A stretch of DNA of 64,000 bases from Macrostomum lignano. Taxonomy: Eukaryota. Under the pieces are notes generated by a model, which worked only from the letters and a program-made list of their open reading frames with translations, did not search any database and was not told the origin of the DNA. Made by a program: the position numbers and the translations under genes. The stretch covers positions 1-64,000 of the forward strand of contig NIVC01002032.1 in assembly GCA_002269645.1 (NCBI GenBank), read 5' to 3'. This document shows positions 4,176 through 63,300 of this stretch, in pieces; position 1 is the first letter of the stretch, and each line of letters begins with the position of its first letter.

Positions 4176-4447
4176 TCCGGCTGAGAACTTACTAGTAATG
4201 AGAAGAGCTTCAACTGTGAACTGGCCTTCTCCTTCATAGCGAAACTTTCACAAAGTTGCAAGGCGTTACCGTCACGTTCACGAGTCTAAAAGACGTCAAC
4301 TGAAGAAGGCAATCCAAAAATGTTTTTGGACTGATTGGGGCAACTCACTTCATCAATCGTGCATTGCAGCGAATTGTGCCAATCAAAAAACTTCTTGGCG
4401 CTTTCCAAATTTGGCACAACAGGAAAGTTCGACAAGTGAGAGATTAC

Positions 4448-7928
<3,481 letters not shown>

Positions 7929-8454
7929 CAGCACCCTCAGCTCCCTCAGCTCCCTCTTCTTCATCAGCACACTCGACTCCCTCCCTCATCGGAATTCACA
8001 CTCTCCTCAGTCCATTTGATCACCAAAATCAATTGAGACATAGAAAGCTCCCTAGCGCAAAACTACTTTCAAATTTATATCCACAACAAAAATTTTTGTG
8101 AAAAATCTGTATTTATGCATTAATCATATATTATATTTTCACAGAAACACAATATTACAAGCTAAGATAAGCTGACATGAAGCTAACAATGTATATTTTT
8201 TTAATATATACGAACTTTGCATGTATGTAATAATGGTTCGATTATAACATTTCTACTAATGATACTATTAAAAGTACACAATAATGCTAAGAATCATGTA
8301 CAAGACTAAACTGATACAACTGACACAGACATTATATTTTTAAAATAAATTCATTAAAAGTTTTTTTGATTAAAAGTTACTATTTAGGAGTTATTTACCC
8401 TCCACTAATTAGTGGAGTCTGAAGGACAACACTGGGGCGCGTTAACAATATTTA

Positions 8455-30200: not shown

Positions 30201-33200
30201 TCGGGAGTTTGGGATTGTGACTAGTTGGGATCCGGAGTTTGGGACTTGTGACTAATTGGGATCGGGATTGGTTGGGACCTGTGACTAGTTGGGATCGGGA
30301 TCGTTTGGGACTTGTGACTAGTTGGGATCGGCATTAGTTGGGACTTGTGACTAGTTAGAATCGGAAGTTTGGAACTCGGGACTAGTTGGGATCCGGAGTT
30401 TGGGATTGTGACTAGTTTGGGATCGGGATCGTTTGGGACTTGTGACTAGTTTGGGATCGGGATCGTTTAGGACTTGTGACTAGTTTGGGATCGGGATCGT
30501 TTGGGACTTGTGACTAGTTTGGGATCGGGATCGTTTGGGACTAATCGATTCGTACTGCATGGGATTTTATCTCACCGAAATCCAGCACTTGGAAGTCTCC
30601 TTGTGCGACTCCGGTATCGACTCGGTGTCGGAGAACGAGTCGACAACAAAATCGACATTGATTTCGCCGGACACGGCCGACAGGTTTTTGCGATTGGCCG
30701 GCCACTGGCTGCGGCACAGCGGGCAGATCAGCGGGTCGCCGTGCGCATTGCGCTCCTCGAACCCTGCGGGTGGGCGGTGCGGCTTGGGGATTAGGGAATG
30801 GCTTGTCCACTGGCTTGCTGCTGGTTGGAGTGGGCGCTTTGGCAGTTGGGTTGGGTTGGTGGTGGTCTCAGGTGTTCAAACTTGCGGGTTGAATAGGTTT
30901 TGGGTGGGGTAGGTTTTGGGTGGTGCAGGTTGCGGGTGGTGCAGGTTGCGGGTGGTGCAGGTTTTGGATGGGGTAGGTTTTGGGTGGTGCAGGTTGCGGG
31001 TGGTGTAGGTTGCGGGTGGTGTAGGTTGCAGGTGGTGTAGGTTGCAGGTGGTGCAGGTTGCGGGTGGTGCAGGTTTTGGATGGTGCAGGTTGCGGGTGGT
31101 GTAGGTTGCGGGTGGTGTAGGTTGCAGGTGGTGCAGGTTGCGGGTGGTGCAGGTTGCGGGTGGTGCAGGTTGCGGGTGGTGCAGGTTGCGGGTGGTGTAG
31201 GTTGCGGGTGGTGTAGGTTGCGGGTGGCGTAGGTTGTGGGTGGTGTAGGTTGCGGGTGGTGTAGGTTGTGGGATGGTGTAGGTTTCGGGTGGTGTAGGTT
31301 GTGGGTGGTGCAGATTGCGGGTGGTACAGGTTGCGGGTGGTGCAGGTTGTGGGTGGTGCAGATTGCGGGTGGTACAGGTTGCGGGTGGTGCAGGTTGTGG
31401 GTGGTGCAGGTTGCGGGTGGTGCAGGTTGCGGGTGTAGGTTTCGGGGCAACTGCTGAGATTGGAAAAAAGGCACACTACTCACAGATCATGAGGCAGTGA
31501 TGATGGAAGTAGTTCTGGCAGCCGAACTGGCACTGGACCAAGCTGTCTGAGACGGTCATTTTTAGCAGACAAATCGAGCACGTGTTTTGGTCTTCGTCTT
31601 CGATGAAGCTGCAGTTTTGGAAACCGGAATTTCAAAGCTAGTAGGGTTTTCACAATGACAGAAGCAATGATATTAACTAATGATGCAACATAGAAACCAT
31701 TGATGATGAAAGGATGCTGGGTTGAGGATGAAGCAATGATAGACTGAGATGCTGACAGAGAATGGGCTGAGTCGATGATGGAAAACAGAGTCTAAGCCGA
31801 CGATGAAGAACAGAGCCTGGGCCGATGATGGAGAAGAGACTGAGCAGATGATGGAGAACAGAGGCTGAGCCGATGGAGAAGAGGCTGAGTTGATGATTGA
31901 GAACAGAGGCTGAGTCAATGATGGAGAACAGAGGCTGGATTGACGTTTCAGAGCGGAAGAGGCTGAGCCAAGCAGGGCAATAACAGCCACAGAGCGGGTA
32001 GCCAGCTCACCATTCGTCCTTTTGCACAACTTCATCAACCGAAGTATTAGTGGACCGGCTATCCCTAAAGCTCGGCCGCTTCTTGCACTTGGCCTTTTCC
32101 CGTTCGTGATAATTCTGAAACAGGCCTTCAACTTCGTAGTTCTTCAAATCGCGCGCCCATATCAATGGATTGTTTTGTTTTAATTTGAACACGCGCAGCA
32201 TAACAAACAGGATGTGGACGCAGTTGGGCGGACCCCGGCCGCACGTGCAGGTCTGCGAGCCGATGATCACCCGGTACTTGCTGGACAGATTGTCGTCACC
32301 GACTAGGAAAGAATTGGGGCCCGGCTGCTGCAGCAGGTACAGCTTAATTCGCATTGCTTTGGCCAGCCGCCTGCTCGCATCCTGTGGCACTTCAAATGGA
32401 GGCGACGGATTGCCGCCGCCTCCGCCGCCTCCGCTGCCGCCGCCGGAGCTACGACGACCGACGCTGCCGTCGCCTCCAGTGGCAGAGCCTCCAGTCGTAG
32501 CAGCGTTAGCAGCAGTAGCGGCACTGTTAGCGGCAGTCGAGTCGACAGGCGACACGCCGCTTCGTTTCCGAGCCCGAATGCTGCTGCCGCCGCTGTCGCC
32601 AGCTGATTCGGAGCCCTTGGCGTTGCCGCTAGCGAGGGCCGCCGACGATTGCGACGACGATAGAAATGGCCGGCGGAAACTCTGCTCGGTGAAGCAATTT
32701 TACGAGTATAATATCATATTATATAGGCACAAATGTTTTACTGCCTACTTGTAGTAGATGCTGAGCATGTGAAACTTTTTATACAGGTAAAAATTAACGC
32801 GTTTAGTTCTACTTATAGTGAAGTCTATATTTCTATCTCCCTCTCTACTCCCCTATCTCCCTCTCTGCTCCCCTAACTCCCTCTCTGCTCCCCTATGTCC
32901 CTATCCACTCTCCTATCTACCTCTCTACCCCCTATCTTCCTCTCTACCTCCTATCTTCCTCTCTACTTCCCTATCTTCCTATCCACTCTCCTATCTACCT
33001 CTCTACTCTCCTATCTCCCTATCCACTCTCTATCTACCTCTCTACCCACTATCTACTTCTCTACCCCCTATCTTCCTCTCTGCTCCCCTATCTCCCCCTC
33101 TGCTCTATCTCCCTATCTACCCCCATCTCCCTTTCTGCCCCCTTTCTTCCTCTCTGCACCCAATACCTCAGCTCAGTCGCAAAAAATACCCCTCTCCCTG

Positions 33201-38191: not shown

Positions 38192-41100
38192 TCAACGCTT
38201 CCGTCGGCAGACCCGTTTGTGCTCCTTGTGCCAGTGGTCCTGCTGGCACTTGATGCTGCAGTAGGAAGTGTTCCAACAGCAATGGTACATGGCCTCTTCT
38301 AGGCAATTGTAGCACCATTGCCTGCGCTTAGTGTTAGCAATGGCCTCTCTGTGCTGGTGCATGATGTTCTCTAGTTCGCGCTGGAATTCGCCGCGCAAAT
38401 CCGCCTCGGATTTGTCCAGCTCAGCTTTAGTCTGCGCCTCCGCTTGCATACGAGCTGCCGTGACCGCCTCCTCCAGCTTCTTGCGCTCGGCGGCCAGAGC
38501 TTCTTCGAATACGTTGGCGTCCAGGGTGGAGGCTTGCACGGATCTGTTGGGGGGGGGAAGAGGGGATGAGCTGTATGCATATGCTGGCTAATAATCGGGA
38601 CTGTGTCGGGACTGTTATCGGGACTATTATCAGGACTTCTGTCGGGACCATTATTGGGACTTATGTTGGGACCATTACTATCGGGACTATTATCAAGATT
38701 TCTGTCGGGGCCATTATCCAGACTTATATCAGGACCATTATTGGGACTTATGTCGGGACCATTATCAGGACCATTCTCGGGACCATCAGGAACATTATCG
38801 GGACTGTTATCATGACTATTATCGGGACCAATGTCGGGACTATTATCAGGACTGCTATCAGGACTTCTGTCGGGACCTTTACCCGGACTCATATCAGGAC
38901 CATTATTGGGACTTTTGTCGAGGCTGATATCGGGAATATTTTTGGGACTTATGTTAATTCAAGACTTATGTTGGGACCATTATGTCGAGACTATTTTCGG
39001 GACTTATGTCGGGATTATTACTGAGGATTATGTCGGGACTAAACAAAAGTGCAAAAGCCTATCTCACCTGTGCACCATCTTCACCGGGCTCGGGGTACGC
39101 AAAGCGGCTCCGCCAGCCCCGGCCGAAGCGGCCGCAGAGGCGCCGCCACCGCCAGCAGAATGATGCGGCTGCTGCTGCTGATGATGCTGGCCGGGCTGCG
39201 GCGGCTGCGTTTGGCCCGACGACTGATGCTGCTGCTGATGGTGCTGCTGCTGACGCGGCTCAACGATGCTCGACGTTACAGCGCAGGTTGAACCGGGCGA
39301 GGAGCTGGCGCTGGAGTCCGTGCTGCTCAAATCCAAACGCTTGCGCTGGCGCTGCTGCTGCTGAGTTGGTGGCGGCTTCTTCTGCTGCTGCTGCTTGCTC
39401 TGCTTGGCAGCAGCGCCCGCGGCAGCCGATCGTCGAGACGAAGTTGCGGTGGATGCGGACGCCGTTGGAGACGCCATGATGGCGGCGCCGACCCCGCCGG
39501 TGGCAACGGTGATGGCGCCGCTGCCGCTGCTACCGGCGCCGCGGCGAAGCTTCGACGAGGCTGCGGAAGCGGTTGAGGCGGCGGCGGCGGAGGCTGAAGA
39601 GGCTGTCGGCGCTGAGCGTCGGCTCGACGTCGCTGTAGCAGCCGGCGCCGCCGCCTTCTTGGCGCCAGTAGCGGCAGTGGACACGCTAGACGGCGCCGCA
39701 GGTGTAGCCGGCTTCTTCCTCGTGGCCTTCCCGCTGGCCACGCTGCTTCCAGCGCCGACGCCGGTGCCGCTCCTGCCGCTGCCGGTTGGACTCAGGCCCA
39801 CCCGGATGCGCCATTCGTCGCGAGACTCAGACGATTCCGAATCGGCGTCCGGCATTGCCTCGTTTTTGGCCGATGTCGCAGCTGCGGCTGCGGCGGCGGC
39901 GGCGGTGGCAGTTATGGAGTTCTCGTCGTCCATATCGTCATCGTCCTCGGCATCGGATTCCGACGTTGTTCCCGACGCGGCGGCGGCTCGACGACGCTTC
40001 GAGGCCGGTTTCTTTTTCTTATTTTTCTGCTTCGACTTGCTAGCAGAGTTTGCCCCCGTCGCCGGAGGTCGACGCGTCGGCGACAAGCCGGAGGACGAGC
40101 CGGCAGCTACGCCGGATGATGGCGAAGTCAGCGCCGCCTTCTTGGCTCCGGTAGCGTCGACAGCCGACGAGGGGCGGCGCTTCCTAGCAGCGGAGCCGCC
40201 GCTGCCGGCGCCACCAGCCGCGGCCAGGATGTACAGCTCATCCGACCAATCGTCATCGCTAGGCGGCATGTCGGAGTCGCCGCTGCTGCTAGTGTAGTAG
40301 CCTTCGCCTACCAGCTTCTGAAGCTTCTGCACTTCGTTCAGGGCCCGTTGGAATGCCGGTGTCCGGCGAACGCCCAGCTCATCGGGCGGGATGTCGTACG
40401 GCCTGGTGCTCTCCTTGGTGACCGCGGCGCGCTCGTGGTAGCTGCCGAAGAATCGAACCTGGAGATTACGAGGTTGTTTAAGATTCGAACAGCATCTGAA
40501 GCATCGGGGAGGAGGGGGGGCAGCCGCACAAGCATCGGAGATGGGCAGCCACACACTGAAGCATCGGGGGGGGGGGCAGTCACACACTGAAGCATCGGGG
40601 GGCAGCCGCACACTGAAGCATCGGGGGGGGGGGCAGCCGCACACTGAAGCATCGGGGGGGGGGGGCAGCCGCACACTGAAGCATCGGGGGGGGGCAGCCG
40701 CACACTGAAGCATCGGGGGGGGGGGGGCAGCAGCACACTGAAGCATCGGGGAGGGGCAGCCACTGAAGCATCGGGGGGGGGGGGGGGGGGGGGCAGCCAC
40801 TGAAGCATTGGGGGGGGGGGCAGCAGCACACTGAAGAATCTGGGGGGGGGGGGGCAGCAGCACACTGAAGCAAAGGCCAGTCCGAACCTCATAAGTGGTG
40901 TCTTTCTCCTCCAGCACTTTGGCCGGCCAGAACGGGAAGCCTTTAAGCTTGGCCCAGACCAGCTCGTGGGCCGGCCGGCAAGGCTTGCTAACCCATTCGG
41001 ACGGCCGGGCCTTGGCGTTAATGTAGCAGTTGGTGCACAATCGAATCTCGTAGATTTCCACTTCAATTTCTCTGAGCAGTACGCGAGCAAGGTCGGCCAT

Positions 41101-43564
41101 GTTGCTGAGGTCGCCGTACATGACGCACACGTCGTGAAGCAGGGTGTTCACGTCTACTAAGAACGACTCCAGCGACCTGGGTTGGTTTATTAGAAATTAT
41201 TTCCGGGTCAGGCCAAAAACTGATTACTAAGTCAGACTATGAAAAAATAGCTATGATATTTGCAGGCAGGACTGTGAAGTATAAACGTTAAAACCGACAC
41301 TAGGATAGACACACTAGGACAGGCTCTAAGACACACACTAGGACAGGCTCTAAGACACACACTAGGACAGGCTCTAAGACACACACTAGGACAGGCACTA
41401 GGACACACACTAGGACAGGCTCTAAGACACACACGTCACACACTAGGACAGGCTCCAAGACACACACTAGGACAGGCTCTAAGACACACACTAGGACAGG
41501 CTCTAAGACACACACTAGGACAGGCTCTAAGACACACACTAGGACAGGCTCTAAGACACACACACTAGGACAGGCTCTAAGACACACACTAGGACAGGCT
41601 CTAAGACACACACTAGGACAGGCTCTAAGACACATACTAGGACAGGCACTAAGACACACACTAGGACAGGCTCTAAGACACACACTAGGACAGGCACTAA
41701 GACACACTAGGACAGGCTCTAAGACACACACTAGGACAGGCTCTAAGACACATACTAGGACAGGCACTAAGACACACACTAGGACAGGCTCTAAGACACA
41801 CACTAGGACAGGCACTAGGACACACACTAGGACAGGCACTAGGACACACACTAGGACAGGCTCTAAGACACATACTAGGACAGGCACTAAGACACACACT
41901 AGGACAGGCTCTAAGACACATACTAGGACAGGCACTAAGACACACACTAGGACAGGCACTAAGACACACTAGGACAGGCTCTAAGACACACACTAGGACA
42001 GGCTCTAAGACACATACTAGGACAGGCACTAAGACACACACTAGGACAGGCTCTAAGACACACACTAGGACAGGCTCTAAGACACACTAGGACAGGCACT
42101 AGGACACACACTAGGACAGGCACTAGGACACACACTAGGACAGGCTCTAAGACACACACGTCACACACTAGGACAGGCTCCAGGACACACACTAGGACAG
42201 GCTCTAAGACACACACTAGGACAGGCTCTAAGACACACACACTAGGACAGGCTCTAAGACACACACTAGGACAGGCTCTAAGACACACACTAGGACAGGC
42301 TCTAAGACACATACTAGGACAGGCACTAAGACACACACTAGGACAGGCACTAAGACACACTAGGACAGGCTCTAAGACACACACTAGGACAGGCTCTAAG
42401 ACACATACTAGGACAGGCACTAAGACACACACTAGGACAGGCTCTAAGACACACACTAGGACAGGCTCTAAGACACACACTAGGACAGGCACTAAGACAC
42501 ACACTAGGACAGGCTCTAAGACACACACTAGGACAGGCTCTAAGACACACACACTAGGACAGGCTCTAAGACACACACTAGGACAGGCTCTAAGACACAC
42601 ACTAGGACAGGCACTAGGACACACACTAGGACAGGCACTAGGACACACACTAGGACAGGCTCTAAGACACACACGTCACACACTAGGACAGGCTCCAAGA
42701 CCCACACTAGGACAGGCCCTAAGACACACACTAGGACAGGCTCTAAGACACACACACTAGGACAGGCTCAAAGACACACACTAGGACAGGCTCTAAGACA
42801 CACACTAGGACAGGCTCTAAGACACACACTAGGACAGGCTCTGAGACACACACTAGGACAGGCTCAAAGACACACACTAGGACAGGCACAAAAACACACA
42901 CTAGGACAGGCACAAAAACAGACACTTACCTGTATCTGCCATCCTTAATCTTCCTGGAGATGACATTCAAATCCAGGTACTTGAACAGCAGATAGTCATT
43001 CCGACCCTGATCGTCCAGGTAGCCAATTTTGCCTAAATCTTTCCACAATGGCTTGCCCTTAAGCCGGTGGGTGGCGAACTCCAGCAGTTTGCGAATCTGC
43101 TTTCGCTTGTACTCAGCCTTGGAGTTCATCACGCAGGTGGGGCAGAGGAAGACACCCTCAGTCGGCGCGGCTTTGCCAGGCAGACAGGCCGGATGCCAAA
43201 CCCGGAAGCATTCGGTGCACTCGAGCACCTCGCCGGGCTTGTGACACCGGAAGCAATACCAATCGTGCTCAAATCGTTTATCAATTGGCTCTTTAAATTC
43301 TGGAATGCGAACGCCTTCCATAGACTCGCCGGCGCGACTGCCTTTGGCAACTGTCCAAGAGTAGCGCTCCAGTAGGCCATCAGACAGCGCATCATCAATG
43401 TGCTTAGCAGCCTCCTGCTCATTGGCTGACAGCTCCTTCATCACTGCCCGAGTGACCCTATCAAGAGTAGTAGCCTGTTTGTTCACTCGACTACACTCGA
43501 CCATGTTCCACAGCTTCTGCACTACAACAGGGTCGCAGGCGCGACGTACAACCGTTCTGACCAT
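38192..43564 (-). CDS. ZMYND11: ZMYND11/BS69 (N-terminal winged helix, PHD, bromodomain, PWWP, MYND), about 888 aa. Exons 43564-42930, 41176-40888, 40458-39068, 38543-38192
   Basis: The N-terminus [32 protein letters not shown] matches the ZMYND11 start as I recall it. PHD: [32 protein letters not shown]: [17 protein letters not shown]...EVRFFG. MYND: [41 protein letters not shown]. Phases 2/0/2 are consistent. Confidence 0.95.
38590..39040. repeat. 12-bp minisatellite (GGGACTATTATC-like) in ZMYND11 intron 3
   Basis: Direct reading. Confidence 0.88.
40490..40875. repeat. Poly-G minisatellite (GCAGCCGCACACTGAAGCATCG{G}n) in ZMYND11 intron 2
   Basis: About 13 units with long G runs on the plus strand. 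Confidence 0.92.
41300..42925. repeat. 24-bp minisatellite (CTAGGACAGGCTCTAAGACACACA)n filling ZMYND11 intron 1
   Basis: Direct reading. Confidence 0.97.
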
Positions 43565-43819: not shown

Positions 43820-44850
<1,031 letters not shown>

Positions 44851-44903: not shown

Positions 44904-44986
44904 AAGCAAGGCTCAGACATCAGGTTTGCGATCAATCACTAAAGTTGATCAGCATTACGTCCCGTTTGTGTCATCACTGCTTGCTT
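44904..44986 (-). ncRNA. C/D-box snoRNA, U82/SNORD82-like (copy between NOP2 stop and ZMYND11 start)
   Basis: Minus strand: AAGCAAG-cag-TGATGA(C)-cacaaacGGGACGTAATG-CTGA(D')-tcaactttag-TGATTGA(C')-tcgcaaacctgatgt-CTGA(D)-gc-CTTGCTT. 7-bp terminal stem. The guide is complementary to the conserved 18S AUUACGUCCC. Confidence 0.85.
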
Positions 44987-45693
44987 CTTAAAACGTTTGT
45001 TTTTAGAGATAAAAGAACCCAGACAATTAGATAGATACAGACAGACAGACAGACAGACAGACCAGCTACCTACTGAGTATAGCTACTCACACTACCAATG
45101 AAATATGCACAGCAAAGTAAAACAACGAAAGCCAACAGATGTCAGCACAGAAACTCTCAATCAAATGGCAGATTATATTTATCGTTCGCGCAAAAATAAC
45201 TTACACAGCTACCATTTTGCAATTGAAACGATCAATCAAATTACTCAATGAACATTTTTGTTTGCTTGTACAGCCGCAAGCAAGTGGAAAAAATAAAACC
45301 GCCATGAATGCACTACTCATTTAGTAGCAATACAAGAAAAAAATGCACCCAGCAATAAAATATGCCGTTGATTTCACTTTTACCGCTAAACTCGCAAAAA
45401 TGGAGGAAATTAATTCCCATTGACTGAATTTTTTGAATAAATTTCAATTTAATCACCCAAAACTCTGGCTCAAAGCTAATGTCTATGGCCGAAACCGGAA
45501 ACCCCAGTTTTCATTGGCTTTAAAATTATGTCAATGGCCGAAACCCGAAGTCTCAGATTTTATTGGCTAAAAAGCTCTTGTCTATGGCCAAAACAGGTTT
45601 CAATCTCAGCGTGTCAGTTTTATAAAAATACTTATAATATCAATTAAATGATTAACCATTAGCAACAGATAGAGTGACTGTCCTATCCAAAAG

Positions 45694-48600
45694 TTACTTA
45701 GCTTCAGCAGTGCCATTCTTCTTCTTGCTATTATTACTACTACTCTTACTACTAACAGCAGTAGGCTTAGCCCCTCCAGCAGCGGATTTAACTAGCTTAG
45801 CAACAAAGAATCCATCCATATTGTGCTGATGCGGCGTGATTCGTCGAGCGGCCGTCATGCTGGGATAAAATTTCTTGTCACGAAACGCCCGAAACGCGGG
45901 CTCGCCAATGACCAGACCGGTTTCAACCAGTTTCAGCTGGCGCTTTCTTAGAGCGTAGTCAACTACGGCCTCGTTCTCTTCAACTAGCACGCTGCAGGTG
46001 CAGTAGACTATGACTCCGCCAGCCTTAGCGGCATCAACACCAGCTAGTAGCAGCTGCTTCTGCAGGTGACTGCACTTTAGCACGTCTTTCTCCTCTTTGT
46101 TAGCCTTCACGGCTGGGTCCTTGGCAATGACTCCGGTGCCCGTACAGGGAGCGTCAACCAGTACCCGATCGAAATTGTGCATCGTTCGAGGGAATTCTCG
46201 ACCGTCACCAACGCACACGACAATGTTATTGAGGCCGTGACGATGCGCATTGCCCACTACAGCCTTAGCTCGCTCTTTGTTGGCTTCGTTTGCCATCACT
46301 AGGCCTGTGTTGCGCATCAGCTCTGCTATGTAGGTGGTCTTGCCGCCCGGGGCTGCGCACAGGTCCAGCACTTTCTCCTGCGGCCTGCGGGTGGGTGATA
46401 ATATAAGATGCTGTACCGTGTATTTTTGAGTTCTGGTTCTTTTTGAGTTCCGTGTCTATTTGAGTTCCGTGTCTTTTTGAGTTCCGTGTCTATTTGAGTT
46501 CCGTGTCGATTTGAGTTCCGTGTCTATTTGAGTTCCGTGTCTATTTGAGTTCCGTGTCGATTTGAGTTCCGTGTCGATTTGAGTTCCGTGTCTGTTTGAG
46601 TTCCGTGTCTATTTGAGTTCCGTGTCTATTTGAGTTCCGTGTCTATTTGAGTTCCGTGTCGATTTGAGTTCCGTGTCTATTTGAGTTCCGTGTCTATTTG
46701 AGTTCCGTGTCTATTTGAGTTCCGTGTCTATTTGAGTTCCGTGTCTATTTGAGTTCCGTGTTTATTTGAGTTCCGTGTCGATTTGAGTTCCGTGTCTATT
46801 TGAGTTCCGTGTCTATTTGAGTTCCGTGTCTATTTGAGTTCCGTGTCTGTTTGAGTTCCGTGTCTATTTGAGTTCCGTGTCTATTTGAGTTCCGTGTCGA
46901 TTTGAGTTCCGTGTCGATTTGAGTTCCGTGTCTGCTTGGGGAGCACGAGATTTGCCCGCCGAGCTTTTCCCGCCGAGAATTGCCCGCCGAGATTTGCCCG
47001 CATGCTTTTTTCTGCAGCGCATTTAACCAGCGGCAGATTTTGTCTGCATTGCCTCCCCAGTGTTTAGTAAGTCTTAATAAAGAGATTTACCCGATCAAAC
47101 GTTTTGATAGTAATTGCATATCAAATGCATCTTTTTTTTTGGGGGGGGGGGCATTGCAGACAGAATCCAGCTGCCAAATGCGCTGCAGGAAAAAACATTG
47201 CCGGCAAAACTCGGCGGGCAGTTCTCATGGACCCGTCTGTTTGAGTCTGAACTCAGACGAATACGGAACTCAAATAGACACGGAACTCAAAAAGACACGG
47301 AACTAAAAAAGACACGGAACTCAAATCGACACGGAACTCAAACAGACACGGAACTCAAAAAGACACGGAACTCAGACGAATACGGAACTCAAATAGACAC
47401 GGAACTCAGACGAATACGGAACTCAAATAGACACGGAACTCAAATAGACACGGAACTCAAATAGACACGGAACTCAAATAGACACGGAACTCAAATAGAC
47501 ACGGAACTCAAATAGACACGGAACTCAAAAAGACATGGAACTCAAATAGACACGGAACTCAAACAGACACGGAACTCAAATAGACACGGAACTCAAATAG
47601 ACACGGAACTCAAATCGACACGGAACTCAAATAGACACGGAGCTCAAAAAGACATGGAACTCAAATAGACACGGAACTCAAATAGACACGGAACTCAAAC
47701 AGACACGGAACTCAAATCGACACGGAACTCAAATAGACACGGAACTCAAATCGACACGGAACTCAAATCGACACGGAACTCAAATAGACACGGAACTCAA
47801 ATAGACACGGAACTCAAATAGACACGGAACTCAAATAGACACGGAACTCAAATAGACACGGAACTCAAATAGACACGGAACTCAAATAGACATGGAACTC
47901 AAATAGACACGGAACTCAAATCGACACGGAACTCAAATAGACACGGAACTCAAAAAGACATGGAACTCAAATAGACACGGAACTCAAACAGACACGGAAC
48001 TCAAACAGACACGGAACTCAAATAGACACGGAACTCAAACAGACACGGAACTCAAATCGACACGGAACTCAAATCGACACGGAACTCAAATAGACACGGA
48101 ACTCAAATCGACACGGAACTCAAATCGACACGGAACTCAAATAGACACGGAACTCAAATAGACACGGAACTCAAATAGACACGGAACTCAAATAGACACG
48201 GAGCTCAAAAAGACATGGAACTCAAATAGACACGGAACTCAAATAGACACGGAACTCAAATAGACACGGAACTCAAATAGACACGGAACTCAAATAGACA
48301 CGGAGCTCAAAAAGACATGGAACTCAAATAGACACGGAACTCAAATAGACACGGAACTCAAAAAGAACCGGAACTCAAATAGACACGGAACTCAAAAAGA
48401 CACGGAACTCAAATAGACACGGAGCTCAAAAAGACATGGAACTCAAATAGACACGGAACTCAAATAGACACGGAACTCAAAAAGAACCGGAACTCAAATA
48501 GACACGGAACTCAAATAGACACGGAACTCAAATAGACACGGAACTCAAATTGACACGGAACTCAAATAGACACGGAACTCAAACAGACACGGAACTCAAA

Positions 48601-50493
48601 TAGACACGGAACTCAAATAGACACAGAACTCAAATAGACACGGAACTCAAAAAGACACGGAACTCAAAAAGACACGGAACTCAAATTGACACGGAACTCA
48701 AATAGACACGGAACTCAAATAGACACGGAACTCAAAAAGACACGGAACTCAAAAAGACACGGAACTCAAATAGACACGGAACTCAAATAGACACGGAACT
48801 CAAAAGTTGAGGATAGGCAGAGGGGGACCCAGGTTACACCCAGGTTACGAGTTCTGGGTGCAACCTGGCAACCCCAGTGTAACCTGGTGTAACCTGTAAC
48901 AGACATACAGACCTCGTAATTGTGGGTGTAGGTTAAAGGATTGTGGCTGCAGGTTAAAGGATTGTGGGGGTGCAGGTTAAAGGATTGTGGGGGTGCAGGT
49001 TAAAGGATTGTTTGGTTGTAGATTAAAGGATTGTGGGGGTGCAGGTTAAAGGATTGTTTGGTTGTAGATTAAAGGATTGTGGCTGCAGGTTAAAGGATTG
49101 TGGGGGTGCAGGTTAAAGGATTGTGGGGGTGCAGGTTAAAGGATTGTGGGGGTGCAGGTTAAAGGATTGTTTGGTTGTAGATTAAAGGATTGTGGGGGTT
49201 CAGGTTAAAGGATTGTTTGGTTGTAGATTAAAGGATTGTGGCTGCAGGTTAAAGGATTGTGGGGGTGCAGGTTAAAGGATTGTGGGGGTGCAGGTTAAAG
49301 GATTGTTTGGTTGTAGATTAAAGGATTGTGGGGGTGCAGGTTAAAGGATTGTTTGGTTGTAGATTAAAGGATTGTGGCTGCAGGTTAAAGGATTGTGGGG
49401 GTGCAGGTTAAAGGATTGTGGGGGTGCAGGTTAAAGGATTGTTTGGTTGTAGATTAAAGGATTGTGGGGGTGCAGGTTAAAGGATTGTTTGGTTGTAGAT
49501 TAAAGGATTGTGGGGGTGCAGGTTAAAGGATTGTTTGGTTGTAGATTAAAGGATTGTGGGGGTGCAGGTTAAAGGACAGTTCAAAACACGAGTATCTAGT
49601 GCGTAGACAAAATAATACAAGTTCACATTATTGATAAGGAACATACATGCGCAACCTCCAAAACTTGGTCGGCCATGCGACTTAGTTTTAACAAAAATGC
49701 GACGTAGTTTTTGGCCAAAAATGCGACTTACATGTAATAAAAACCCTAAAGCAAAATTAACGCAACTTTGGGTAAACGGCAGGAGTACCTGTAACTGTCT
49801 TATTAGGTCAAAATGCCTCGTCAGCTACTTAGTAATACTACTTGGGTATTTTTCGGGTGGGTATTTTTGCGACTTCCTTGATTGGCTGCCAAATCGGTCG
49901 GCCGGATCGGCCGACTCGGCCGACTGTTGCTCATGTATGATAAGGAAGAAAATTTGTCACACAAAACGTTTATAGAGGTTCATAAATACAAAGGACTATC
50001 CGGGGCACTTAAATCTGCCAGGGAAACCTGAGACGCTGTGCCGAACAATATGATTTTTTAAAGACTCGCCCGCATGAATAGAAGACATTAGAAGAGATTA
50101 ATGAGGATAGAAGAATGGGTGATTAATTTCAAGCAGGAATTCGAGATGCAACTAAAAGCAAAGCGGTGACAGCAAAAGCAAAAGCCAGCGGTGACTCAGA
50201 CATCAGATTTACAGCTCCGTCAGTGAGTTGCTCAGCATTACGTCCCGTTTTTGCTCATAATTTACCTGCGTGGCTCTGGTAAAAACTAGAGAACTTATAA
50301 GAGAACCCAGAAGCATCTCAGAGATTTTGGGTCTTTAGTTAAGATAACAGCAAGCCTCAGGCATCAGATTTGCGATCAATCACTAAAGTGGATCAGCATT
50401 ACGTCCCGTTTGTGTCATCACTGCTTGCTTATTGAATAGTTTGTTGGTTAGGAATAGAAGAGACCCATATAGCTAGATAGATGATAGATAGAT

Positions 50494-50532
<39 letters not shown>

Positions 50533-50573
50533 GATAGATAGATAGATAGATAGATAGATAGACAGGCAGACCC

Positions 50574-50610
<37 letters not shown>

Positions 50611-50679
50611 TAGACACACAGATAGACACACAGACAGACAGACAGATAGACACACAGATAGACAGACAGATAGACACAC

Positions 50680-50710
<31 letters not shown>

Positions 50711-50929
50711 TAGACAGACAGATAGACACACAGATAGACACACAGACAGACAGACAGATAGACACACAGATAGACACACAGATAGACATACAGATAGACA
50801 CACAGACACACAGACAGACAGACAGATAGACACACAGATAGACAGACAGATAGACACACAGATAGACACACAGATAGACACACAGACAGACAGACAGATA
50901 GACACACAGATAGACAGACAGATAGACAC

Positions 50930-50968
<39 letters not shown>

Positions 50969-50969
50969 T

Positions 50970-51014
<45 letters not shown>

Positions 51015-51015
51015 A

Positions 51016-51088
<73 letters not shown>

Positions 51089-52836
51089 CAAAAGCAAGCC
51101 AGGCCGCACTCACTTCGGATCCAAGGCCAGCACAGGCAGCATACTGGCGGCACCCTGCAGCATGTAGTGGCCAGCCAAGTACTCCGGGGTAGCGCCCAGC
51201 GGCACCTGGGAATCGTACACAACCAGGCCCACCTTGGACCATTTGTCGAACGGGTCCAGATTGACGCCGCGAGAAATGAGCGCCTGCGCCAAATCTTTGC
51301 GCCGAGTTTTCAACGCATTGGTTCGCAACGTCAGCGGCCTGTCGACTTCGTTGGATTGTAGAAAGTCCAGGATGTCCTTTGGATAGAGGTCCAGCAGGCG
51401 GCGCATTAGGAAAGCGTTATAGGAGAATCGCATGCAGAGCAGGCTGCACAGCCGGTCCAAACAGTCGGATCGGGAGAATTTAGCGCCAGTTTTTGGGGAC
51501 TTCTTCTTCTTAGCCTTCTCGACACTGTCGCCGGAGTTGCCTAGCAACTGGAGCAGACTGTCGATGCGGCCATCAAGCTCGGAGAGATCGGCAGGAGCCT
51601 GGGAATTTTTATTAATGTTGAAGTCAGTCAGTCAGTCAGTCAGTCAGTCAGTCAGTCAGTGAGTCAGTGAGTCAGTGAGTCAGTGAGTCAGTGAGTCAGT
51701 CAGTCAGTCAGTCAGTCAGTCAGTGAGTCAGCCAGTCAGTCAGTCAGTGAGTCAGTCAGTCAGTCAGTCAGTGAGTCAGTCAGTCAGTGAGTCAGTCAGC
51801 CTTACCTGCTGCAAATCTGCTGCTTTAGCGGCCTCGTCCTCATCAGCCTGGCCAGCCTCTTCGGCGTCATCATCTTCGCCAGCCTCATCTGCAGCCTCCT
51901 TTTCAACGCCTTCGCTGCTGTCAGAATCCTCAGCCTCGTCGGCATCCTCATCGCTGATAGGAAAATCGTCGTTTAAAAAATCTTCGTCTTCTTCTTCTAG
52001 CAGAGTCCGGCCAGCAGTTCCTCCTTCCTCTTCAGCTGAGTCGTCTTCATCCAGATCGAGTCGCAGTCGTTTGCTGCTTTTATTGGCTTCGGCCGTTTGA
52101 GCTTGCTCCAGCTCGTCTAGACTGTCCATGTCTTCGTCTGCCTCGTCAGACTCTTCTTCATCCGGGCGTGGAGGCTTCGGTGGACTGTTGGATTTGACGT
52201 GGTTGGGTCAATTAAGGTCAATCAGTGGACACCCCGGGATGTCTGTGGGGCTGTGTTAGAATCAGTGGACACCATGGGATGTCTGCGGGGCTGTATTATT
52301 AGAATCAGTGGACACCCCAGGTGTCTGCGGGGCCGTATTATTAGAATCAGTGGACACCCCCAGGTGTCTGCGGGGCTGTATTATTAGAATCAGTGGACAC
52401 CCCCAGGTGTCTGCGGGGCTGTATAACTAGAATCAGTGGACACCCCAGGTGTCTGGGATGCTTATGATCTTAAGATGTATTTCTATTCTCTATAAACGCA
52501 AAATTTACAGGTGCACAAGCAGAACAATCAGAATTAGTCCATGGTTTTAATGCCAATCAATAAAAGCACACACACTGACCCAGCATTATCGCCATTCGAC
52601 CGTTGCTGTTCAAGCTTTTTCTTTTGCTTCTCCATTTTCTTAGCAGCAACTGTGGCCTGTTTAACAACTCGCCGTTTCATTCGCTGCTTCTGCCGACTGC
52701 TCAGCTGACGCGGGCCGGCAGCCTCCTCTGCATCAACCTCAGTCTCAATACTAGCCGGCAGCTTGGGGTCTTTCTGCTTTCGAGTTTTGCGACCCGGACC
52801 CCGCTGCGACTGCAGGCGATAGTCTTTGCGGCCCAT
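45694..52836 (-). CDS. NOP2: NOP2/NSUN1 28S rRNA m5C methyltransferase, about 603 aa. Exons 52836-52580, 52184-51806, 51598-51114, 46384-45694
   Basis: N-terminus MGRK...[11 protein letters not shown], acidic region, [106 protein letters not shown]. Both catalytic Cys motifs are present. Phases 2/0/2 are consistent. Confidence 0.96.
46416..48805. repeat. Head-to-head inverted array of a 17-bp unit (TTTGAGTTCCGTGTCTA): about 30 copies at 46416-46933 and about 90 reverse copies at 47250-48805
   Basis: The right array GAACTCAAATAGACACG is the reverse complement of the left unit. Lies in NOP2 intron 3. Confidence 0.95.
46938..47234. mobile_element. About 297-bp MITE with about 100-bp imperfect TIRs and a candidate 8-bp TSD
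   Basis: gcccgccgagatttgcccgcatgcttttttctgcagcgcattt...gtctgcattgcc pairs with 47141-47234. Flanks are GTCTGCTT (46930-37) and GTCTGTTT (47235-42), 7/8 identical. Confidence 0.7.
48920..49575. repeat. 23-bp minisatellite (GGTTAAAGGATTGTGGGGGTGCA)n
   Basis: Direct reading. Confidence 0.95.
50182..50274 (-). ncRNA. C/D-box snoRNA paralog (divergent box C) in NOP2 intron 3
   Basis: Minus strand: TTATGA (variant C), aaaaacGGGACGTAATG-CTGA(D'), ...aaatctgatgt-CTGA(D). Flanks AGCCA/TGGCT and GGT/ACC can pair. Confidence 0.65.
50349..50429 (-). ncRNA. C/D-box snoRNA, U82/SNORD82-like, in NOP2 intron 3
   Basis: Minus strand: AGCAAGC-ag-TGATGA-cacaaacGGGACGTAATG-CTGA-tccactttag-TGATTGA-tcgcaaatctgatgc-CTGA-g-GCTTGCT. 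Perfect 7-bp terminal stem, sense to the host gene. Confidence 0.88.
50470..51090. repeat. (GATA)n grading into (GACA)n
   Basis: Direct reading. Confidence 0.96.
51623..51800. repeat. (AGTC)n microsatellite filling NOP2 intron 2
   Basis: Direct reading. Confidence 0.95.
52215..52455. repeat. About 35-bp tandem repeat in NOP2 intron 1
   Basis: TAGAATCAGTGGACACCCCCAGGTGTCTGCGGGGCTGTATTAT repeated. Confidence 0.9.
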
Positions 52837-60303: not shown

Positions 60304-63300
60304 GCAGACCAAAACTTAGAGCAACAAACAGGCGAGGATAGCGAAGTTAGTAAGGAATGGATTGAGTAAGTACTCATTTTCTAGACCTAAATTCTTACTT
60401 AAAGTTCATAAAGTTCTATCAAATTATTTCAACATAATGGCCTTTGGTATAGATGGCAGTAACTTTAAGATTTAGTAAATGCCTAGATCTAAAAAATAAG
60501 ACGTAGCTAGTACTAATAGCTAGATGTAGTGCATGTATGAATTCGGGTACAGCAGTCTATTTTGATCTACACTTTCTACTTCACAAAATAATCTAACAGG
60601 CTTCAACTAAACCTGAAGCGTCAGCTGAAATTAATCAACGAGTTGCCATGGCAACAAGCCAGACGCTTAGTCAGCCACTGTCCATCCGCCAGTGAACTGA
60701 ACAACCCCAGCTTTGTCCTGCCCGATGGGCGTCAATCACTGCCTGCGGCTAGTGGCCGGCGCCGATCTGTCATTCGTCAAAGGCGACTCAGAGACCGCCT
60801 GCGCCAGTTTAGTAGTGCTCAGCCTGCCCAATCTCAGCCCGGTGCACAAAATCTGTCGCCAAGTCAAAGTCTCGCATCCATACGTGCTAGGATTTCTCAG
60901 CTTCCGCGAGGCGCCCCCGTTGCTTGAACTGTTGGACGAGCTGCGCGCTACAAAGCCGGAGCTGATGCCGCAGGCTCTTCTACTTGACGGCAATGGCACC
61001 TTGCACCCGCGCGGATTCGGTTTGGCCTGCCACGTTGGCGTGCTGGCCGGCCTACCGACTGTGGGCGCGGCTAAGAGCTTCTTCCATGTTGACGGGCTCG
61101 ACCAGAAGCAGGTGCGAAAGCTGGTTAAGGAGGCCGGCAACAGGTTAGTGGCGTAGTTGGAATCGATAAATTGTCAGAGTTTCACTATTCACCGCCGATC
61201 CCAAACCTTACACAACGTTGAAAAAAAACGTCACGATGACAAGACTCACTGTCACTAGTGCCTCTAGCGCAGTCGCAGGGGTTGGCAAACTTCGGTCCGC
61301 GGCACACATGCGGCCTGCAGAGCCTCTCTATCCGGCCCTCGGGTCCTTTGAAACTTCACGATAGCAATCCGGCCCGCTCAGGGTTTGTGTCTCTCCTTGG
61401 CTCTCTTTTCTCTAATCACCTCTTTTTTTCTTATCTCTTCTCCTCCTCTCTTGTCTCATCTCTTCTCTCCTCTCCTCTCCTCTACTGTCTCCTTTTTTCT
61501 TTGCTGTCTCGTCACTCCTCTCCTCTCTTCTCCCTTCTCTTCTCTCCTCTCTCCACTCCTCTCCTCTCCTCTACTGTCTCCTTTCTCCTCTGCTGTCTCC
61601 TCTCTCTTCTCTCCTCTCTTCTCGCTTCTTTTTTCTCTTCTCTTCTCTCCTGTCTCCTCTCTTCACTCTCCTCTTCTGTCTCTTCTCTCCTCTTCCCCTC
61701 TCCTTTCCTCTTCTCTCTCCTGACTCCTGTCCTCTCCTTTCATCTCGTCTCATTTTTTCCTCGCCTCTCCTTTCTTCTATCTTCCCTATTCCCTCTCCTT
61801 TCCCCTCCTCTGACCCGCAGTCATGCTCTAGGTTCTCTATCTGGTCCTCGAGGTAAAAACAGTTTGCTGGCCCCTGCTCTACCGACTCTGGAGTGGCTCT
61901 TGTGACTTTGTTTAACGACTCAAACTTCTATAATTCCATTGTCCAAGAGTCGTTAGTGTTAGCGCTCAAATTTCTTCTAATTTAAGTAGGCTAAATAGAG
62001 TTGTTATAAATGCGAAATGCGATTCTAATTTGTAAAGTGACGCAGATGCGCTTCAGACGCAACTCGGTGATTCTGCAGCGTGTCTGGCACGCCCCCTAAG
62101 CTTTTACAACACCCTAACCATACTTATAAACCCCATCCTAAGCCCTTTAGCTGGGTTTTAAGCGTGAGAATTGCACTGTTATTCGGTATACGGTGTCCAA
62201 CTTCTGGATGTTAAAATTTAAACTTGATTTCATGACACACGCTATGATCGGAACAAGTTGGCACATTGTTTCTCGGAGAAGTTTTGAAGGCCTTTTCTCA
62301 AGATGAGTTCCAAGGTCCCAAATTGCTCAAAATGAGTTCTAACATCCCAAATTGCTCAAAATGAGTTCTAACATCCCAAACTGCTCAAGATGAGTCTTAA
62401 AATCCTAAATTGCGAGCCAGATGAGTTCCGAGATCCCAAACTTCTCAAGATGACTCTTAAAATCCCAAACTGCTCAAGATGAGTCTTCAAATCCCAAATT
62501 GCTAGCAAGATGAGTTCCGGGATCCCAAACTGCTCAAGATGAGTCTTAAAATCCCAAACTGCTCAAGATGAGTCTTCAAATCCCAAACTGCTCAAGATGA
62601 GTCTTCAAATCCCAAATTGCGAGCAAGATGAGTTCCTAGATCCCAAACTGCTCAAGATGAGTCTTAAAATCCCAAATTGCGAGCAAGATGAGTTCCTAGA
62701 TCCCAAACTGCTCAAGACGTGTCTTCAAATCCCAAATTGCGAGCAAGATGAGTTCCTAGATCCCAAACTGCTCAAGACGTGTCTTAAAATCCCAAACTGC
62801 TCAAGATGAGTCTTCAAATCCCAAACTGCTCAAGATGAGTCTTCAAATCCCAAATTGCGAGCAAGATGAGTTCCTAGATCCCAAACTGCTCAAGATGAGT
62901 CTTAAAATCCCAAATTGCGAGCAAGATGAGTTCCTAGATCCCAAACTGCTCAAGACGTGTCTTAGTCAAGATGAGTCAAATCCCAAACTGCTCAAGATGA
63001 GTCTTCAAATCCCAAATTGCGAGCAAGATGAGTTCCTAGATCCCAAACTGCTCAAGATGAGTCTTAAAATCCCAAATTGCGAGCAAGATGAGTTCCTAGA
63101 TCCCAAACTGCTCAAGATGAGTCTTCAAATCCCAAATTGCGAGCAAGATGAGTCTTCAAATCCCAAACTGCTCAAGATGAGTCTTAAAATCCCAAATTGC
63201 GAGCAAGATGAGTTCTAAGATCCCAAATAGCCCATAAAAGTCTCAGAATCCCAAGAAGATGGCCAAGTTATAAATAAGTAAATGCTCGTATCAATGATAC

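What the first reader, a model, noticed from the sequence alone, without database searches (positions are those of the whole stretch)
44904..50429. Three paralogous C/D snoRNAs with a U82/SNORD82-like guide hosted by NOP2
Seen: three copies (44904-44986, 50182-50274, 50349-50429) on the host strand share the D' guide GGGACGTAATG-CTGA. They also share AAA(T/C)CTGATG(T/C) before box D, although their middles diverge. The two intact copies have different but perfectly pairing 7-bp terminal stems. Established: AUUACGUCCC is conserved near the 18S 3' end, and the D+5 rule predicts 2'-O-methylation of the A in AUU[A]CGUCCC. From memory this equals human 18S Am1678, guided by SNORD82 from nucleolin introns. 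Inference: a host-gene switch to NOP2 with local triplication, and possibly a second, unassigned guide upstream of box D.
Basis: partly seen in the sequence, partly recalled or inferred. Interest (0 to 1): 0.75.

Follow-up and report, generated by a model that had tools for sequence, protein, structure and literature searches.

The report
SNORD82-type snoRNA triplet at NOP2
Three nearby copies of an ordinary small nucleolar guide RNA gene sit in and just after the NOP2 gene of an invertebrate, probably a flatworm; they are the counterpart of human SNORD82, which directs methylation of one conserved adenosine near the 3' end of 18S ribosomal RNA, so this is a new family member in a new host gene rather than a new kind of element.

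Summary
Three minus-strand elements (44986..44904, 50274..50182, 50429..50349) share the exact 15-mer GGGACGTAATG-CTGA.

Copies 1 and 3 are textbook box C/D snoRNAs. Each has C GUGAUGA, an 18-nt spacer, D' CUGA, C' UGAUUGA, a 15-nt spacer, D CUGA and a 7-9 bp terminal stem. Copy 2 keeps the guide, D', D and a different terminal stem, but its C box is damaged (UUAUGAG).

The D' guide pairs 10/10 with AUUACGUCCC of 18S. This puts the methyl group on the A of GAUU[A]CG, the equivalent of human 18S Am1678, whose guide is SNORD82. Rfam's SNORD82 consensus has the same guide in the same register. All three copies nevertheless score below its gathering cut-off (23, 21 and 17 bits against 43).

Copies 3 and 2 lie in the last 4.7-kb NOP2 intron. 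Copy 1 lies 708 nt past the NOP2 stop codon and beyond an AATAAA, so it is not demonstrably NOP2-hosted.

NOP2 loci of three other invertebrates lack the snoRNA. Same-guide snoRNAs occur in EEF2 introns of other animals. Host relocation of snoRNAs is a known phenomenon.

The conserved element before box D found no conserved rRNA target.

Verdict: new member of a known kind, low to moderate interest.

The parts
44904..44986 (-). snoRNA copy 1, canonical box C/D. C box 44977..44971 (GUGAUGA); antisense element 44963..44954 (GGGACGUAAU); D' 44952..44949; C' 44938..44932 (UGAUUGA); D-side spacer 44931..44917; D box 44916..44913; terminal stem 44986..44980 with 44910..44904. It lies 708 nt after the NOP2 stop codon and 1.34 kb upstream of the ZMYND11-like ATG.
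   Evidence: MFE fold closes the terminal stem, z = -2.7.
50349..50429 (-). snoRNA copy 3, canonical box C/D. C box 50421..50415; antisense element 50407..50398; D' 50396..50393; C' 50382..50376; D-side spacer 50375..50361; D box 50360..50357; terminal stem 50429..50423 with 50355..50349. It starts 684 nt into the last NOP2 intron.
   Evidence: (SNORD82 23.1 bits, E = 0.024).
50182..50274 (-). snoRNA copy 2, a divergent paralogue. Degenerate C box UUAUGAG 50260..50254 (alternative register AUGAGCA); antisense element 50246..50237; D' 50235..50232; no clear C'; D box 50199..50196; its own bulged 9-bp terminal stem 50274..50264 with 50192..50184. It lies 75 nt downstream of copy 3 in the same intron.
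46385..51113 (-). Last intron of NOP2 (GT at 51113-51112, AG at 46386-46385; 4729 nt). It hosts copies 3 and 2 and otherwise consists mostly of micro- and minisatellites.
   Evidence: The reading frame joins ...LALDPK|[16 protein letters not shown].
45694..46384 (-). Last NOP2 exon, holding the whole RsmB/F-type methyltransferase domain and the stop codon.
   Evidence: PF01189, E = 1.2e-69; 3660 homologues, named NOP2.
51114..52836 (-). Upstream NOP2 exons: ATG exon 52836..~52580, acidic exon ~52184..51806, and the RsmF_N/ferredoxin-like exon 51598..51114, with two short repeat-filled introns between them.

Best explanation
The locus holds three tandemly derived paralogues of one box C/D methylation-guide snoRNA gene. 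This gene is the counterpart of vertebrate SNORD82/U82.

**Proposed mechanism**
- Each RNA would be cut out of a Pol II transcript made on the minus strand. For copies 3 and 2 that transcript is the last intron of NOP2. For copy 1 it would be read-through, polycistronic or neighbour-gene transcription.
- The RNA would be protected by its C/D kink-turn and terminal stem, and assembled with Snu13, Nop56, Nop58 and fibrillarin.
- The 10-nt element GGGACGUAAU, one base upstream of box D', pairs with 18S AUUACGUCCC. Fibrillarin then 2'-O-methylates the A of GAUU[A]CG, which is equivalent to human Am1678.

**Status of each copy**
- Copies 1 and 3 are probably functional.
- Copy 2 has lost the critical G of box C. 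It is either a decaying paralogue or uses a non-canonical C box.
- The conserved AAAYCUGAUGY before box D is treated as an orphan second spacer.

**Shown versus inferred**
- Shown: sequence architecture, complementarity and register, paralogue conservation, and host gene identity.
- Inferred: expression, snoRNP assembly and the methylation itself.
For: **Architecture**
- C, D', C' and D boxes and a 7-9 bp terminal stem lie at canonical spacings in copies 1 and 3.

**Guide and target**
- The guide pairs perfectly at positions 2-11 with GATTACGTCCC in all 121 eukaryotic 18S contigs examined. Position 5 is the A. No other conserved rRNA site matches.
- The Rfam SNORD82 consensus has the same element and register. 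SNORD82 is hit by all three copies.
- Human Am1678 is assigned to SNORD82 (PMC11550049; bioRxiv 10.64898/2026.09.11.751006).

**Selection**
- Copy 1 versus copy 3: the snoRNA body shows 73 matches over 77 aligned bases, about 95% (92.4% over the whole 79-column alignment). The 80-nt flanks are 68% and 51% identical.
- Copy 2 versus copies 1/3: only the guide with D' and the D-proximal element are conserved. The terminal stem is rebuilt from different bases.

**Context**
- All copies are on the sense strand of NOP2.
- Nine independent metagenomic snoRNAs carry the same guide, boxes and terminal stems, showing that this guide family is widespread.
Against: - There are no expression or methylation data.
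- All three copies fall well below Rfam's SNORD82 gathering score (16.9-23.1 bits against 43). No family reaches its gathering score anywhere in the window.
- The species' own 18S was not available, so target conservation is inferred from other eukaryotes.
- Copy 1 is outside any recognisable intron.
- Copy 2 lacks a canonical C box, and its fold is no better than shuffles (z = +0.27).
- The snoRNAs lie 3.8 kb from the 3' splice site, far from the position that is optimal in vertebrates.
Confidence: 0.8

Rival explanations
1. The copies are a dual-function snoRNA. The conserved 11-15 nt before box D (UCGCAAAYCUGAUGY) is a second working antisense element. It would either guide a lineage-specific methylation, predicted on the C of RCAU[C]AGRUUU, or add accessory pairing to the 18S hairpin loop UCAUCAG that lies about 15 nt 5' of the D' target.
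For: - AAAYCUGAUGY is the only stretch between D' and D that is conserved between copy 2 and copies 1/3.
- The two variable positions (Y) would both tolerate a G in a target through G-C or G.U pairing.
- Typical 18S reads UCAUCAG-CUUGCG just upstream of the methylation site, which partly matches the complement CAUCAGRUUUGCG.
- RNAduplex gives -11 to -13 kcal/mol.
Against: - No conserved target was found in 121 rDNA contigs covering 18S, 5.8S and 28S; the best hits are single-locus.
- The duplex with the adjacent 18S segment sits only at the 4th-11th percentile of random rDNA windows. It needs a mismatch and a bulge (6+2+3 bp).
- The element contains a CUGA and a UGAUGY, so it may be conserved as a box-like or structural sequence.
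- Same-guide snoRNAs from other animals do not share it.
- There is no target in the window.
Confidence: 0.15
2. Only one copy, or none, is a live gene. The others are decaying duplicates produced by the local repeat-driven instability of this region: copy 2 with a broken C box, and copy 1 stranded outside the host transcript.
For: - In copy 2 the G3 of RUGAUGA, needed for the kink-turn G.A pair, is replaced, and no C' box is present.
- Copy 1 lies after the AATAAA/ATTAAA signals of NOP2.
- The region is saturated with unstable satellites.
- All three share flank motifs (CTGGGTTCT...), showing duplication of a roughly 160-nt unit rather than independent genes.
Against: - Copy 1 is about 95% identical to copy 3 across the snoRNA body while its flanks have diverged to 51-68%. 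It keeps perfect boxes and a 7-9 bp stem.
- Copy 2 keeps the guide 19/19 and has a compensated terminal stem of its own, despite otherwise heavy divergence.
- Copy 1 is on the same strand as both neighbouring genes, so read-through or polycistronic transcription could supply it.
Confidence: 0.3
3. The match is a chance resemblance, or a dispersed repeat that merely contains box-like motifs.
For: - A guide-type 10-mer match next to a CTGA is expected about 3.5 times per window by chance.
- Rfam scores are below threshold.
Against: - None of 100 shuffles gave three copies of the 15-mer.
- The full C/D'/C'/D and stem architecture is present twice.
- The target and register are the same as in an established family.
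- Independent homologues exist in other eukaryotes.
Confidence: 0.03

Closest known systems
SNORD82 / U82 (Rfam RF00158), guide for human 18S Am1678
   Same: - Box C/D snoRNA with the functional antisense element upstream of D' in the 5' half.
- One unpaired base lies between the element and CUGA.
- The element GGGAC-N-UAAU selects the same 18S adenosine.
- ACAAA immediately 5' of GGGAC is also shared with the consensus.
- Similar size.
   Different: - Scores 17-23 bits against the gathering score of 43.
- The guide has G where the vertebrate consensus has U. This matches C versus A in the target (AUUACG here; AUUAAG in human, from memory).
- The C' box, D-side spacer and terminal stem are unrelated.
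- The 3' end carries two CUGA motifs.
- The host is NOP2, not nucleolin (human host from memory).
- Three local paralogues are present.
Unnamed same-guide box C/D snoRNAs in EEF2 introns of other metazoans (metagenome contigs L125, L128, L132, L133, L134, L137)
   Same: - The motif UGAUGA-N(8-9)-GGGACGUAAU-N-CUGA.
- A D box and a 5-8 bp terminal stem.
- Intronic, on the sense strand of a housekeeping translation or ribosome-related gene.
- L132 also has two paralogues in one host gene, one with a variant C box.
   Different: - Different host gene (EEF2).
- Shorter: 55-56 nt from C to D, against 64 nt here.
- Different D-side spacer and stems.
- Source organisms are unknown.
Generic intron-encoded box C/D snoRNAs with lineage-specific host relocation
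   Same: A conserved modification target combined with a non-conserved genomic position. Hoeppner & Poole 2012 (PMC3511168) and the Xenopus survey (PMC6984369) describe this as ongoing intragenomic mobility of snoRNAs.
   Different: Nothing qualitative. This is one more instance of the pattern.

Membership tests
Box C/D snoRNA (2'-O-methylation guide) | Box C (RUGAUGA) near the 5' end and box D (CUGA) near the 3' end | tested here: met
   Copies 1 and 3 have GUGAUGA and CUGA. Copy 2 has only UUAUGAG (G3 lost), so the feature is not met for copy 2.
Box C/D snoRNA (2'-O-methylation guide) | Terminal stem of at least 4-5 bp bringing C and D together | tested here: met
   The stems are 7-9 bp in copies 1 and 3 and 9 bp with two bulges in copy 2. 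They are built from different bases in copy 2, which is compensatory.
Box C/D snoRNA (2'-O-methylation guide) | Internal D' and C' boxes | tested here: met
   D' is CUGA in all three copies. C' is UGAUUGA in copies 1 and 3, with a GAUCAA/UUGAUC stem between D' and C'. C' is unclear in copy 2.
Box C/D snoRNA (2'-O-methylation guide) | At least 10 nt of complementarity to rRNA or snRNA ending next to D or D', with the target nucleotide opposite position 5 | tested here: met
   There are 10 Watson-Crick pairs (positions 2-11) with the 18S sequence GATTACGTCCC in 121 of 121 rDNA contigs. The species' own 18S was not available.
Box C/D snoRNA (2'-O-methylation guide) | Stable 60-100-nt RNA bound by fibrillarin, Nop56, Nop58 and Snu13; target methylated | not testable with these tools
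   Needs RNA-seq, RiboMeth-seq or immunoprecipitation.
SNORD82 (Rfam RF00158) | Covariance-model score at or above the gathering threshold (43 bits) | tested here: not met
   Scores are 23.1 bits (copy 3), 21.4 (copy 2) and 16.9 (copy 1); the best E-value is 0.024. Nothing was found at gathering level.
SNORD82 (Rfam RF00158) | D' antisense element directing methylation of the 18S adenosine equivalent to human A1678 | tested here: met
   The element and register match the Rfam consensus GGGACUUAAUACUGA. The mapping of the site onto the human numbering is from memory of the human 18S sequence.
SNORD82 (Rfam RF00158) | Sequence homology outside the boxes and guide; conserved host (nucleolin in human) | tested here: inconclusive
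   Only ACAAA 5' of the guide is shared. The host here is NOP2. Host conservation is not expected over such distances.

The most novel reading that the evidence does not exclude
The snoRNA may be bipartite. Besides the SNORD82-type D' guide, the paralogue-conserved element before box D would engage the 18S hairpin loop (UCAUCAG...) immediately 5' of the methylation site. Alternatively it would engage a lineage-specific second target. One snoRNP would then clamp about 35 nt at the 3'-major-domain/h44 junction of pre-18S. It would do so while being co-expressed from the gene of NOP2, a protein reported to form non-catalytic complexes with box C/D snoRNPs (PMC9561284).
Probability: 0.1. Interest if true: 0.5.

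Novelty: new member of a known kind. Interest (0 to 1): 0.25.

Why it matters
The finding adds a clear orthologue of a conserved rRNA-methylation guide in a lineage with almost no snoRNA annotation. The lineage is apparently a flatworm with no close relative in the databases. It predicts that the decoding-region-proximal 18S Am (human 1678) is also conserved there.

It also gives a clean example of snoRNA relocation and local amplification. The same guide sits in NOP2 here, in EEF2 in other invertebrates, and in nucleolin in human. This is useful for genome annotation and for studies of snoRNA mobility, but it does not change how snoRNAs are thought to work.

Tried and rejected
- **Rfam at gathering thresholds over the whole window:** nothing.
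- **SNORD109A hit on copy 2** (28.5 bits, gathering score 35): rejected. It is sub-threshold, driven by boxes and an AUGCUGAG coincidence, and the family is a mammal-specific orphan (family background from memory).
- **Other weak hits** (snoZ266, snoR53Y, SNORD2 and others): generic box C/D similarity only.
- **Target search for the D-side element**, with either CUGA taken as box D, against 121 rDNA contigs: no conserved site. Against the window itself: nothing. The duplex with the adjacent 18S segment is not significantly better than background.
- **Same snoRNA in NOP2 loci of other species:** absent in Darwinula (L002), Dreissena (L003), Fasciola (L140) and four compact Logan contigs (L141-L144), even allowing 2 guide mismatches for L002, L003 and L140.
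- **Synteny through the neighbouring ZMYND11-like gene:** its closest relatives (L138, L139) show no snoRNA and no NOP2.
- **Literature searches:** SNORD82+A1678, SNORD82+18S+nucleolin and Me18S-A1806 returned nothing.
- **Human-type target variant** (GATTAAGTCCC...) in viral contigs: none found. The guide/target co-variation with human therefore rests on memory.
- **Identifying the species:** not achieved. Best NOP2 identity is 65% and best ZMYND11-like identity is 54%, and the only named relatives of the latter are cestodes.
Full report
**Observation**

On the minus strand the window carries three elements that share the exact 15-mer GGGACGTAATGCTGA, at 44949-63, 50232-46 and 50393-407. No other match exists, even with 2 mismatches. 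None of 100 dinucleotide shuffles reached three matches. The alignment shows a second shared block, AAAYCTGATGYCTGAG, at the 3' end.

**Anatomy**

Copy 1 (44986..44904) and copy 3 (50429..50349) read as follows:
- terminal stem
- GUGAUGA (box C)
- CACAAAC-GGGACGUAAU-G
- CUGA (D')
- a 10-nt loop
- UGAUUGA (C')
- UCGCAAAYCUGAUGY
- CUGA (D)
- G, then the terminal stem

The stems are AAGCAAG/CUUGCUU in copy 1 (up to 9 bp with G.U pairs) and AGCAAGC/GCUUGCU in copy 3. The D' and C' boxes are bridged by GAUCAA/UUGAUC.

Copy 2 (50274..50182) keeps AAAC-GGGACGUAAUG-CUGA and AAAUCUGAUGUCUGAG. Its C box is UUAUGAG, so the G that forms the kink-turn G.A pair is lost. An alternative register, AUGAGCA, keeps RUGA. 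Copy 2 has no clear C' box. Its terminal stem is built from entirely different bases (GCCA-C-GC-A-GGU/ACCGCUGGC).

Two CUGA motifs lie 3 nt apart at the 3' end. The terminal stems of all three copies abut the second one, which also gives a 15-nt C'-D spacer. I therefore take the second CUGA as box D. Infernal aligned SNORD82's D box to the first one.

**Evidence of constraint**

- Copy 1 versus copy 3: 73 matches over 77 aligned bases of the snoRNA body (about 95%). The 80-nt flanks are 68% and 51% identical.
- Copy 2 versus the others: about 70% overall, with identity concentrated in the guide plus D' and in the D-proximal block.
- Shared flank motifs (CTGGGTTCT about 45 nt upstream; TCTCTGA..TGCTYCTGGGT downstream) show that a unit of roughly 160 nt was duplicated in tandem, and that one unit now sits 5.3 kb away.

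**Target**

A scan of prokaryotic genome assemblies for the 18S motif returned more than 120 contaminating eukaryotic rDNA contigs, with 43 different upstream variants, so the taxa are diverse. I used these as an rDNA panel.

The D' element pairs with 10 Watson-Crick pairs (positions 2-11) to GATTACGTCCC in all 121 contigs. No other conserved rRNA site matches. These contigs were selected for that motif, so the result shows uniqueness and breadth rather than independent confirmation. Position 5 is the A of GAUU[A]CG.

Human 18S Am1678 is assigned to SNORD82. Rfam's SNORD82 consensus reads ACAAAGGGACUUAAUACUGA, the same element with the same one-base spacer and the same ACAAA prefix. SNORD82 is the only family that all three copies hit on the element's strand (23.1, 21.4 and 16.9 bits). 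All are far below the 43-bit gathering score, and nothing in the window reaches any gathering score.

These are therefore functional counterparts and probable orthologues of SNORD82, but not formal Rfam members.

A guide-type 10-mer match next to a CTGA is expected about 3.5 times per window by chance. The case rests on the whole architecture, not on that match.

**Host and context**

The minus strand encodes NOP2:
- ATG exon 52836..~52580
- acidic exon ~52184..51806
- RsmF_N/ferredoxin-like exon 51598..51114
- a single last exon, 46384..45694, holding the whole RsmB/F methyltransferase domain (PF01189, 1.2e-69)

The last intron (51113..46385, GT..AG, 4729 nt) contains copy 3, which starts 684 nt from the 5' splice site. 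Copy 2 follows 75 nt later and ends 3.8 kb from the 3' splice site. The rest of the intron is satellites.

Copy 1 is not in NOP2. It starts 708 nt after the stop codon. AATAAA and ATTAAA lie 129 and 240 nt after the stop. Copy 1 is 1.34 kb upstream of the ATG of a ZMYND11-like gene on the same strand. Its supply by read-through, a polycistronic transcript or a 5'-UTR intron of the neighbour is inference only.

**Comparison across species**

- NOP2 loci of Darwinula, Dreissena and Fasciola contain no such snoRNA.
- Four compact NOP2 contigs from Logan also contain none.
- A metagenome scan for UGAUGA-N(4-12)-GGGACGUAAU-N-CUGA gave 14 loci. Nine have a D box and a 5-8 bp terminal stem.
- Six of those nine lie between metazoan EEF2 exons. 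One contig carries two paralogues in different EEF2 introns.

The guide is therefore widespread and its host gene varies. This matches the published picture of conserved targets with mobile genomic positions (PMC3511168; PMC6984369). The direction of any 'switch' cannot be determined here.

**The D-side element**

Its complement, RCAUCAGRUUUGCGA, has no conserved match in the rDNA panel with either CUGA taken as box D. It has no match in the window.

It partly resembles the 18S hairpin UCAUCAG-CUUGCG that sits just 5' of the D' target. The best duplex needs a mismatch and a bulge. It ranks only at the 4th-11th percentile of random rDNA windows. It remains an orphan spacer, a possible lineage-specific guide or a box-like structural sequence.

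**Source organism**

The organism is not identified. The best NOP2 identity is 65% (Fasciola). The only named relatives of the ZMYND11-like exon are cestodes, at 38-39% identity. This suggests a flatworm lineage without close database relatives.

**Verdict**

This is a genuine, ordinary box C/D snoRNA family member, the SNORD82 counterpart. It is locally triplicated, with two copies in the last NOP2 intron, one just downstream of the gene, and one copy with a damaged C box. It is a new member of a known kind.

That NOP2 protein associates with box C/D snoRNPs in human cells (PMC9561284) makes the host a neat coincidence. It is not evidence of a functional link.

Noticed in passing
window 46416-46933 and 47263-48804: A 17-nt minisatellite (CCGTGTCTATTTGAGTT) is present as two arrays in opposite orientation, about 30 and 91 copies. 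Together they form a very large palindrome with a spacer of about 330 nt inside the NOP2 intron. A 23/136-nt minisatellite follows at 48924-49576.
   Followed up: partly
window 52220-52455: NOP2 intron 1 consists largely of 5.6 copies of a 43-nt unit. Each unit holds a GGACACC...GGUGUCC hairpin. Function unknown.
   Followed up: no
window 4364-8101; 43821-44848; 50497-51088; many others: Microsatellite load is extreme: a (GATA)n array of about 3.7 kb, a 1-kb (AGAT)n array abutting snoRNA copy 1, and an (AGAC)n array abutting copy 3. Long (CAGA)n-type arrays (the CLSV-type repeat ORFs) are scattered through the window.
   Followed up: no
window 45470-45600 (minus strand, NOP2 3' UTR region): Three imperfect copies of a unit of about 55 nt (GGCCATAGACA...TTTCGGCC) lie right after the NOP2 stop codon. 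One of them carries the AATAAA.
   Followed up: no
window 38195-43564 (-), 24278-32555 (-), 60713-61153 (+): Neighbouring genes are: a ZMYND11-like gene (PWWP and ZMYND11-type MYND finger); a MAP3K1-like gene (SWIM finger, CEP104-like TOG domain, kinase domain, very long poly-Q/poly-A tracts); and endonuclease V.
   Followed up: partly
window 42929-43564 (-): The ZMYND11-like N-terminal exon has only 7 detectable homologues in 5.8 billion proteins. The named ones are cestodes (Anoplocephala, Hydatigera). This hints that the window comes from a poorly sampled flatworm lineage.
   Followed up: partly
L004-L123 (genome contigs): More than 120 contigs in 'bacterial/archaeal' species-representative genomes carry eukaryotic 18S rDNA. 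This is eukaryotic contamination of those assemblies and MAGs.
   Followed up: no
L132 547-561 and 2454-2468 (-); L125, L128, L133, L134, L137: Metazoan EEF2 genes in metagenome contigs host snoRNAs with the same 18S guide. L132 has two paralogues in different introns, and the second has a variant C box (GGAUGA).
   Followed up: partly
window 2747-2793 (+): A lone CTGA-adjacent 10-mer (CGCAATGTGC) is complementary to a conserved rRNA 10-mer. It has no C box nearby and is most likely chance.
   Followed up: no
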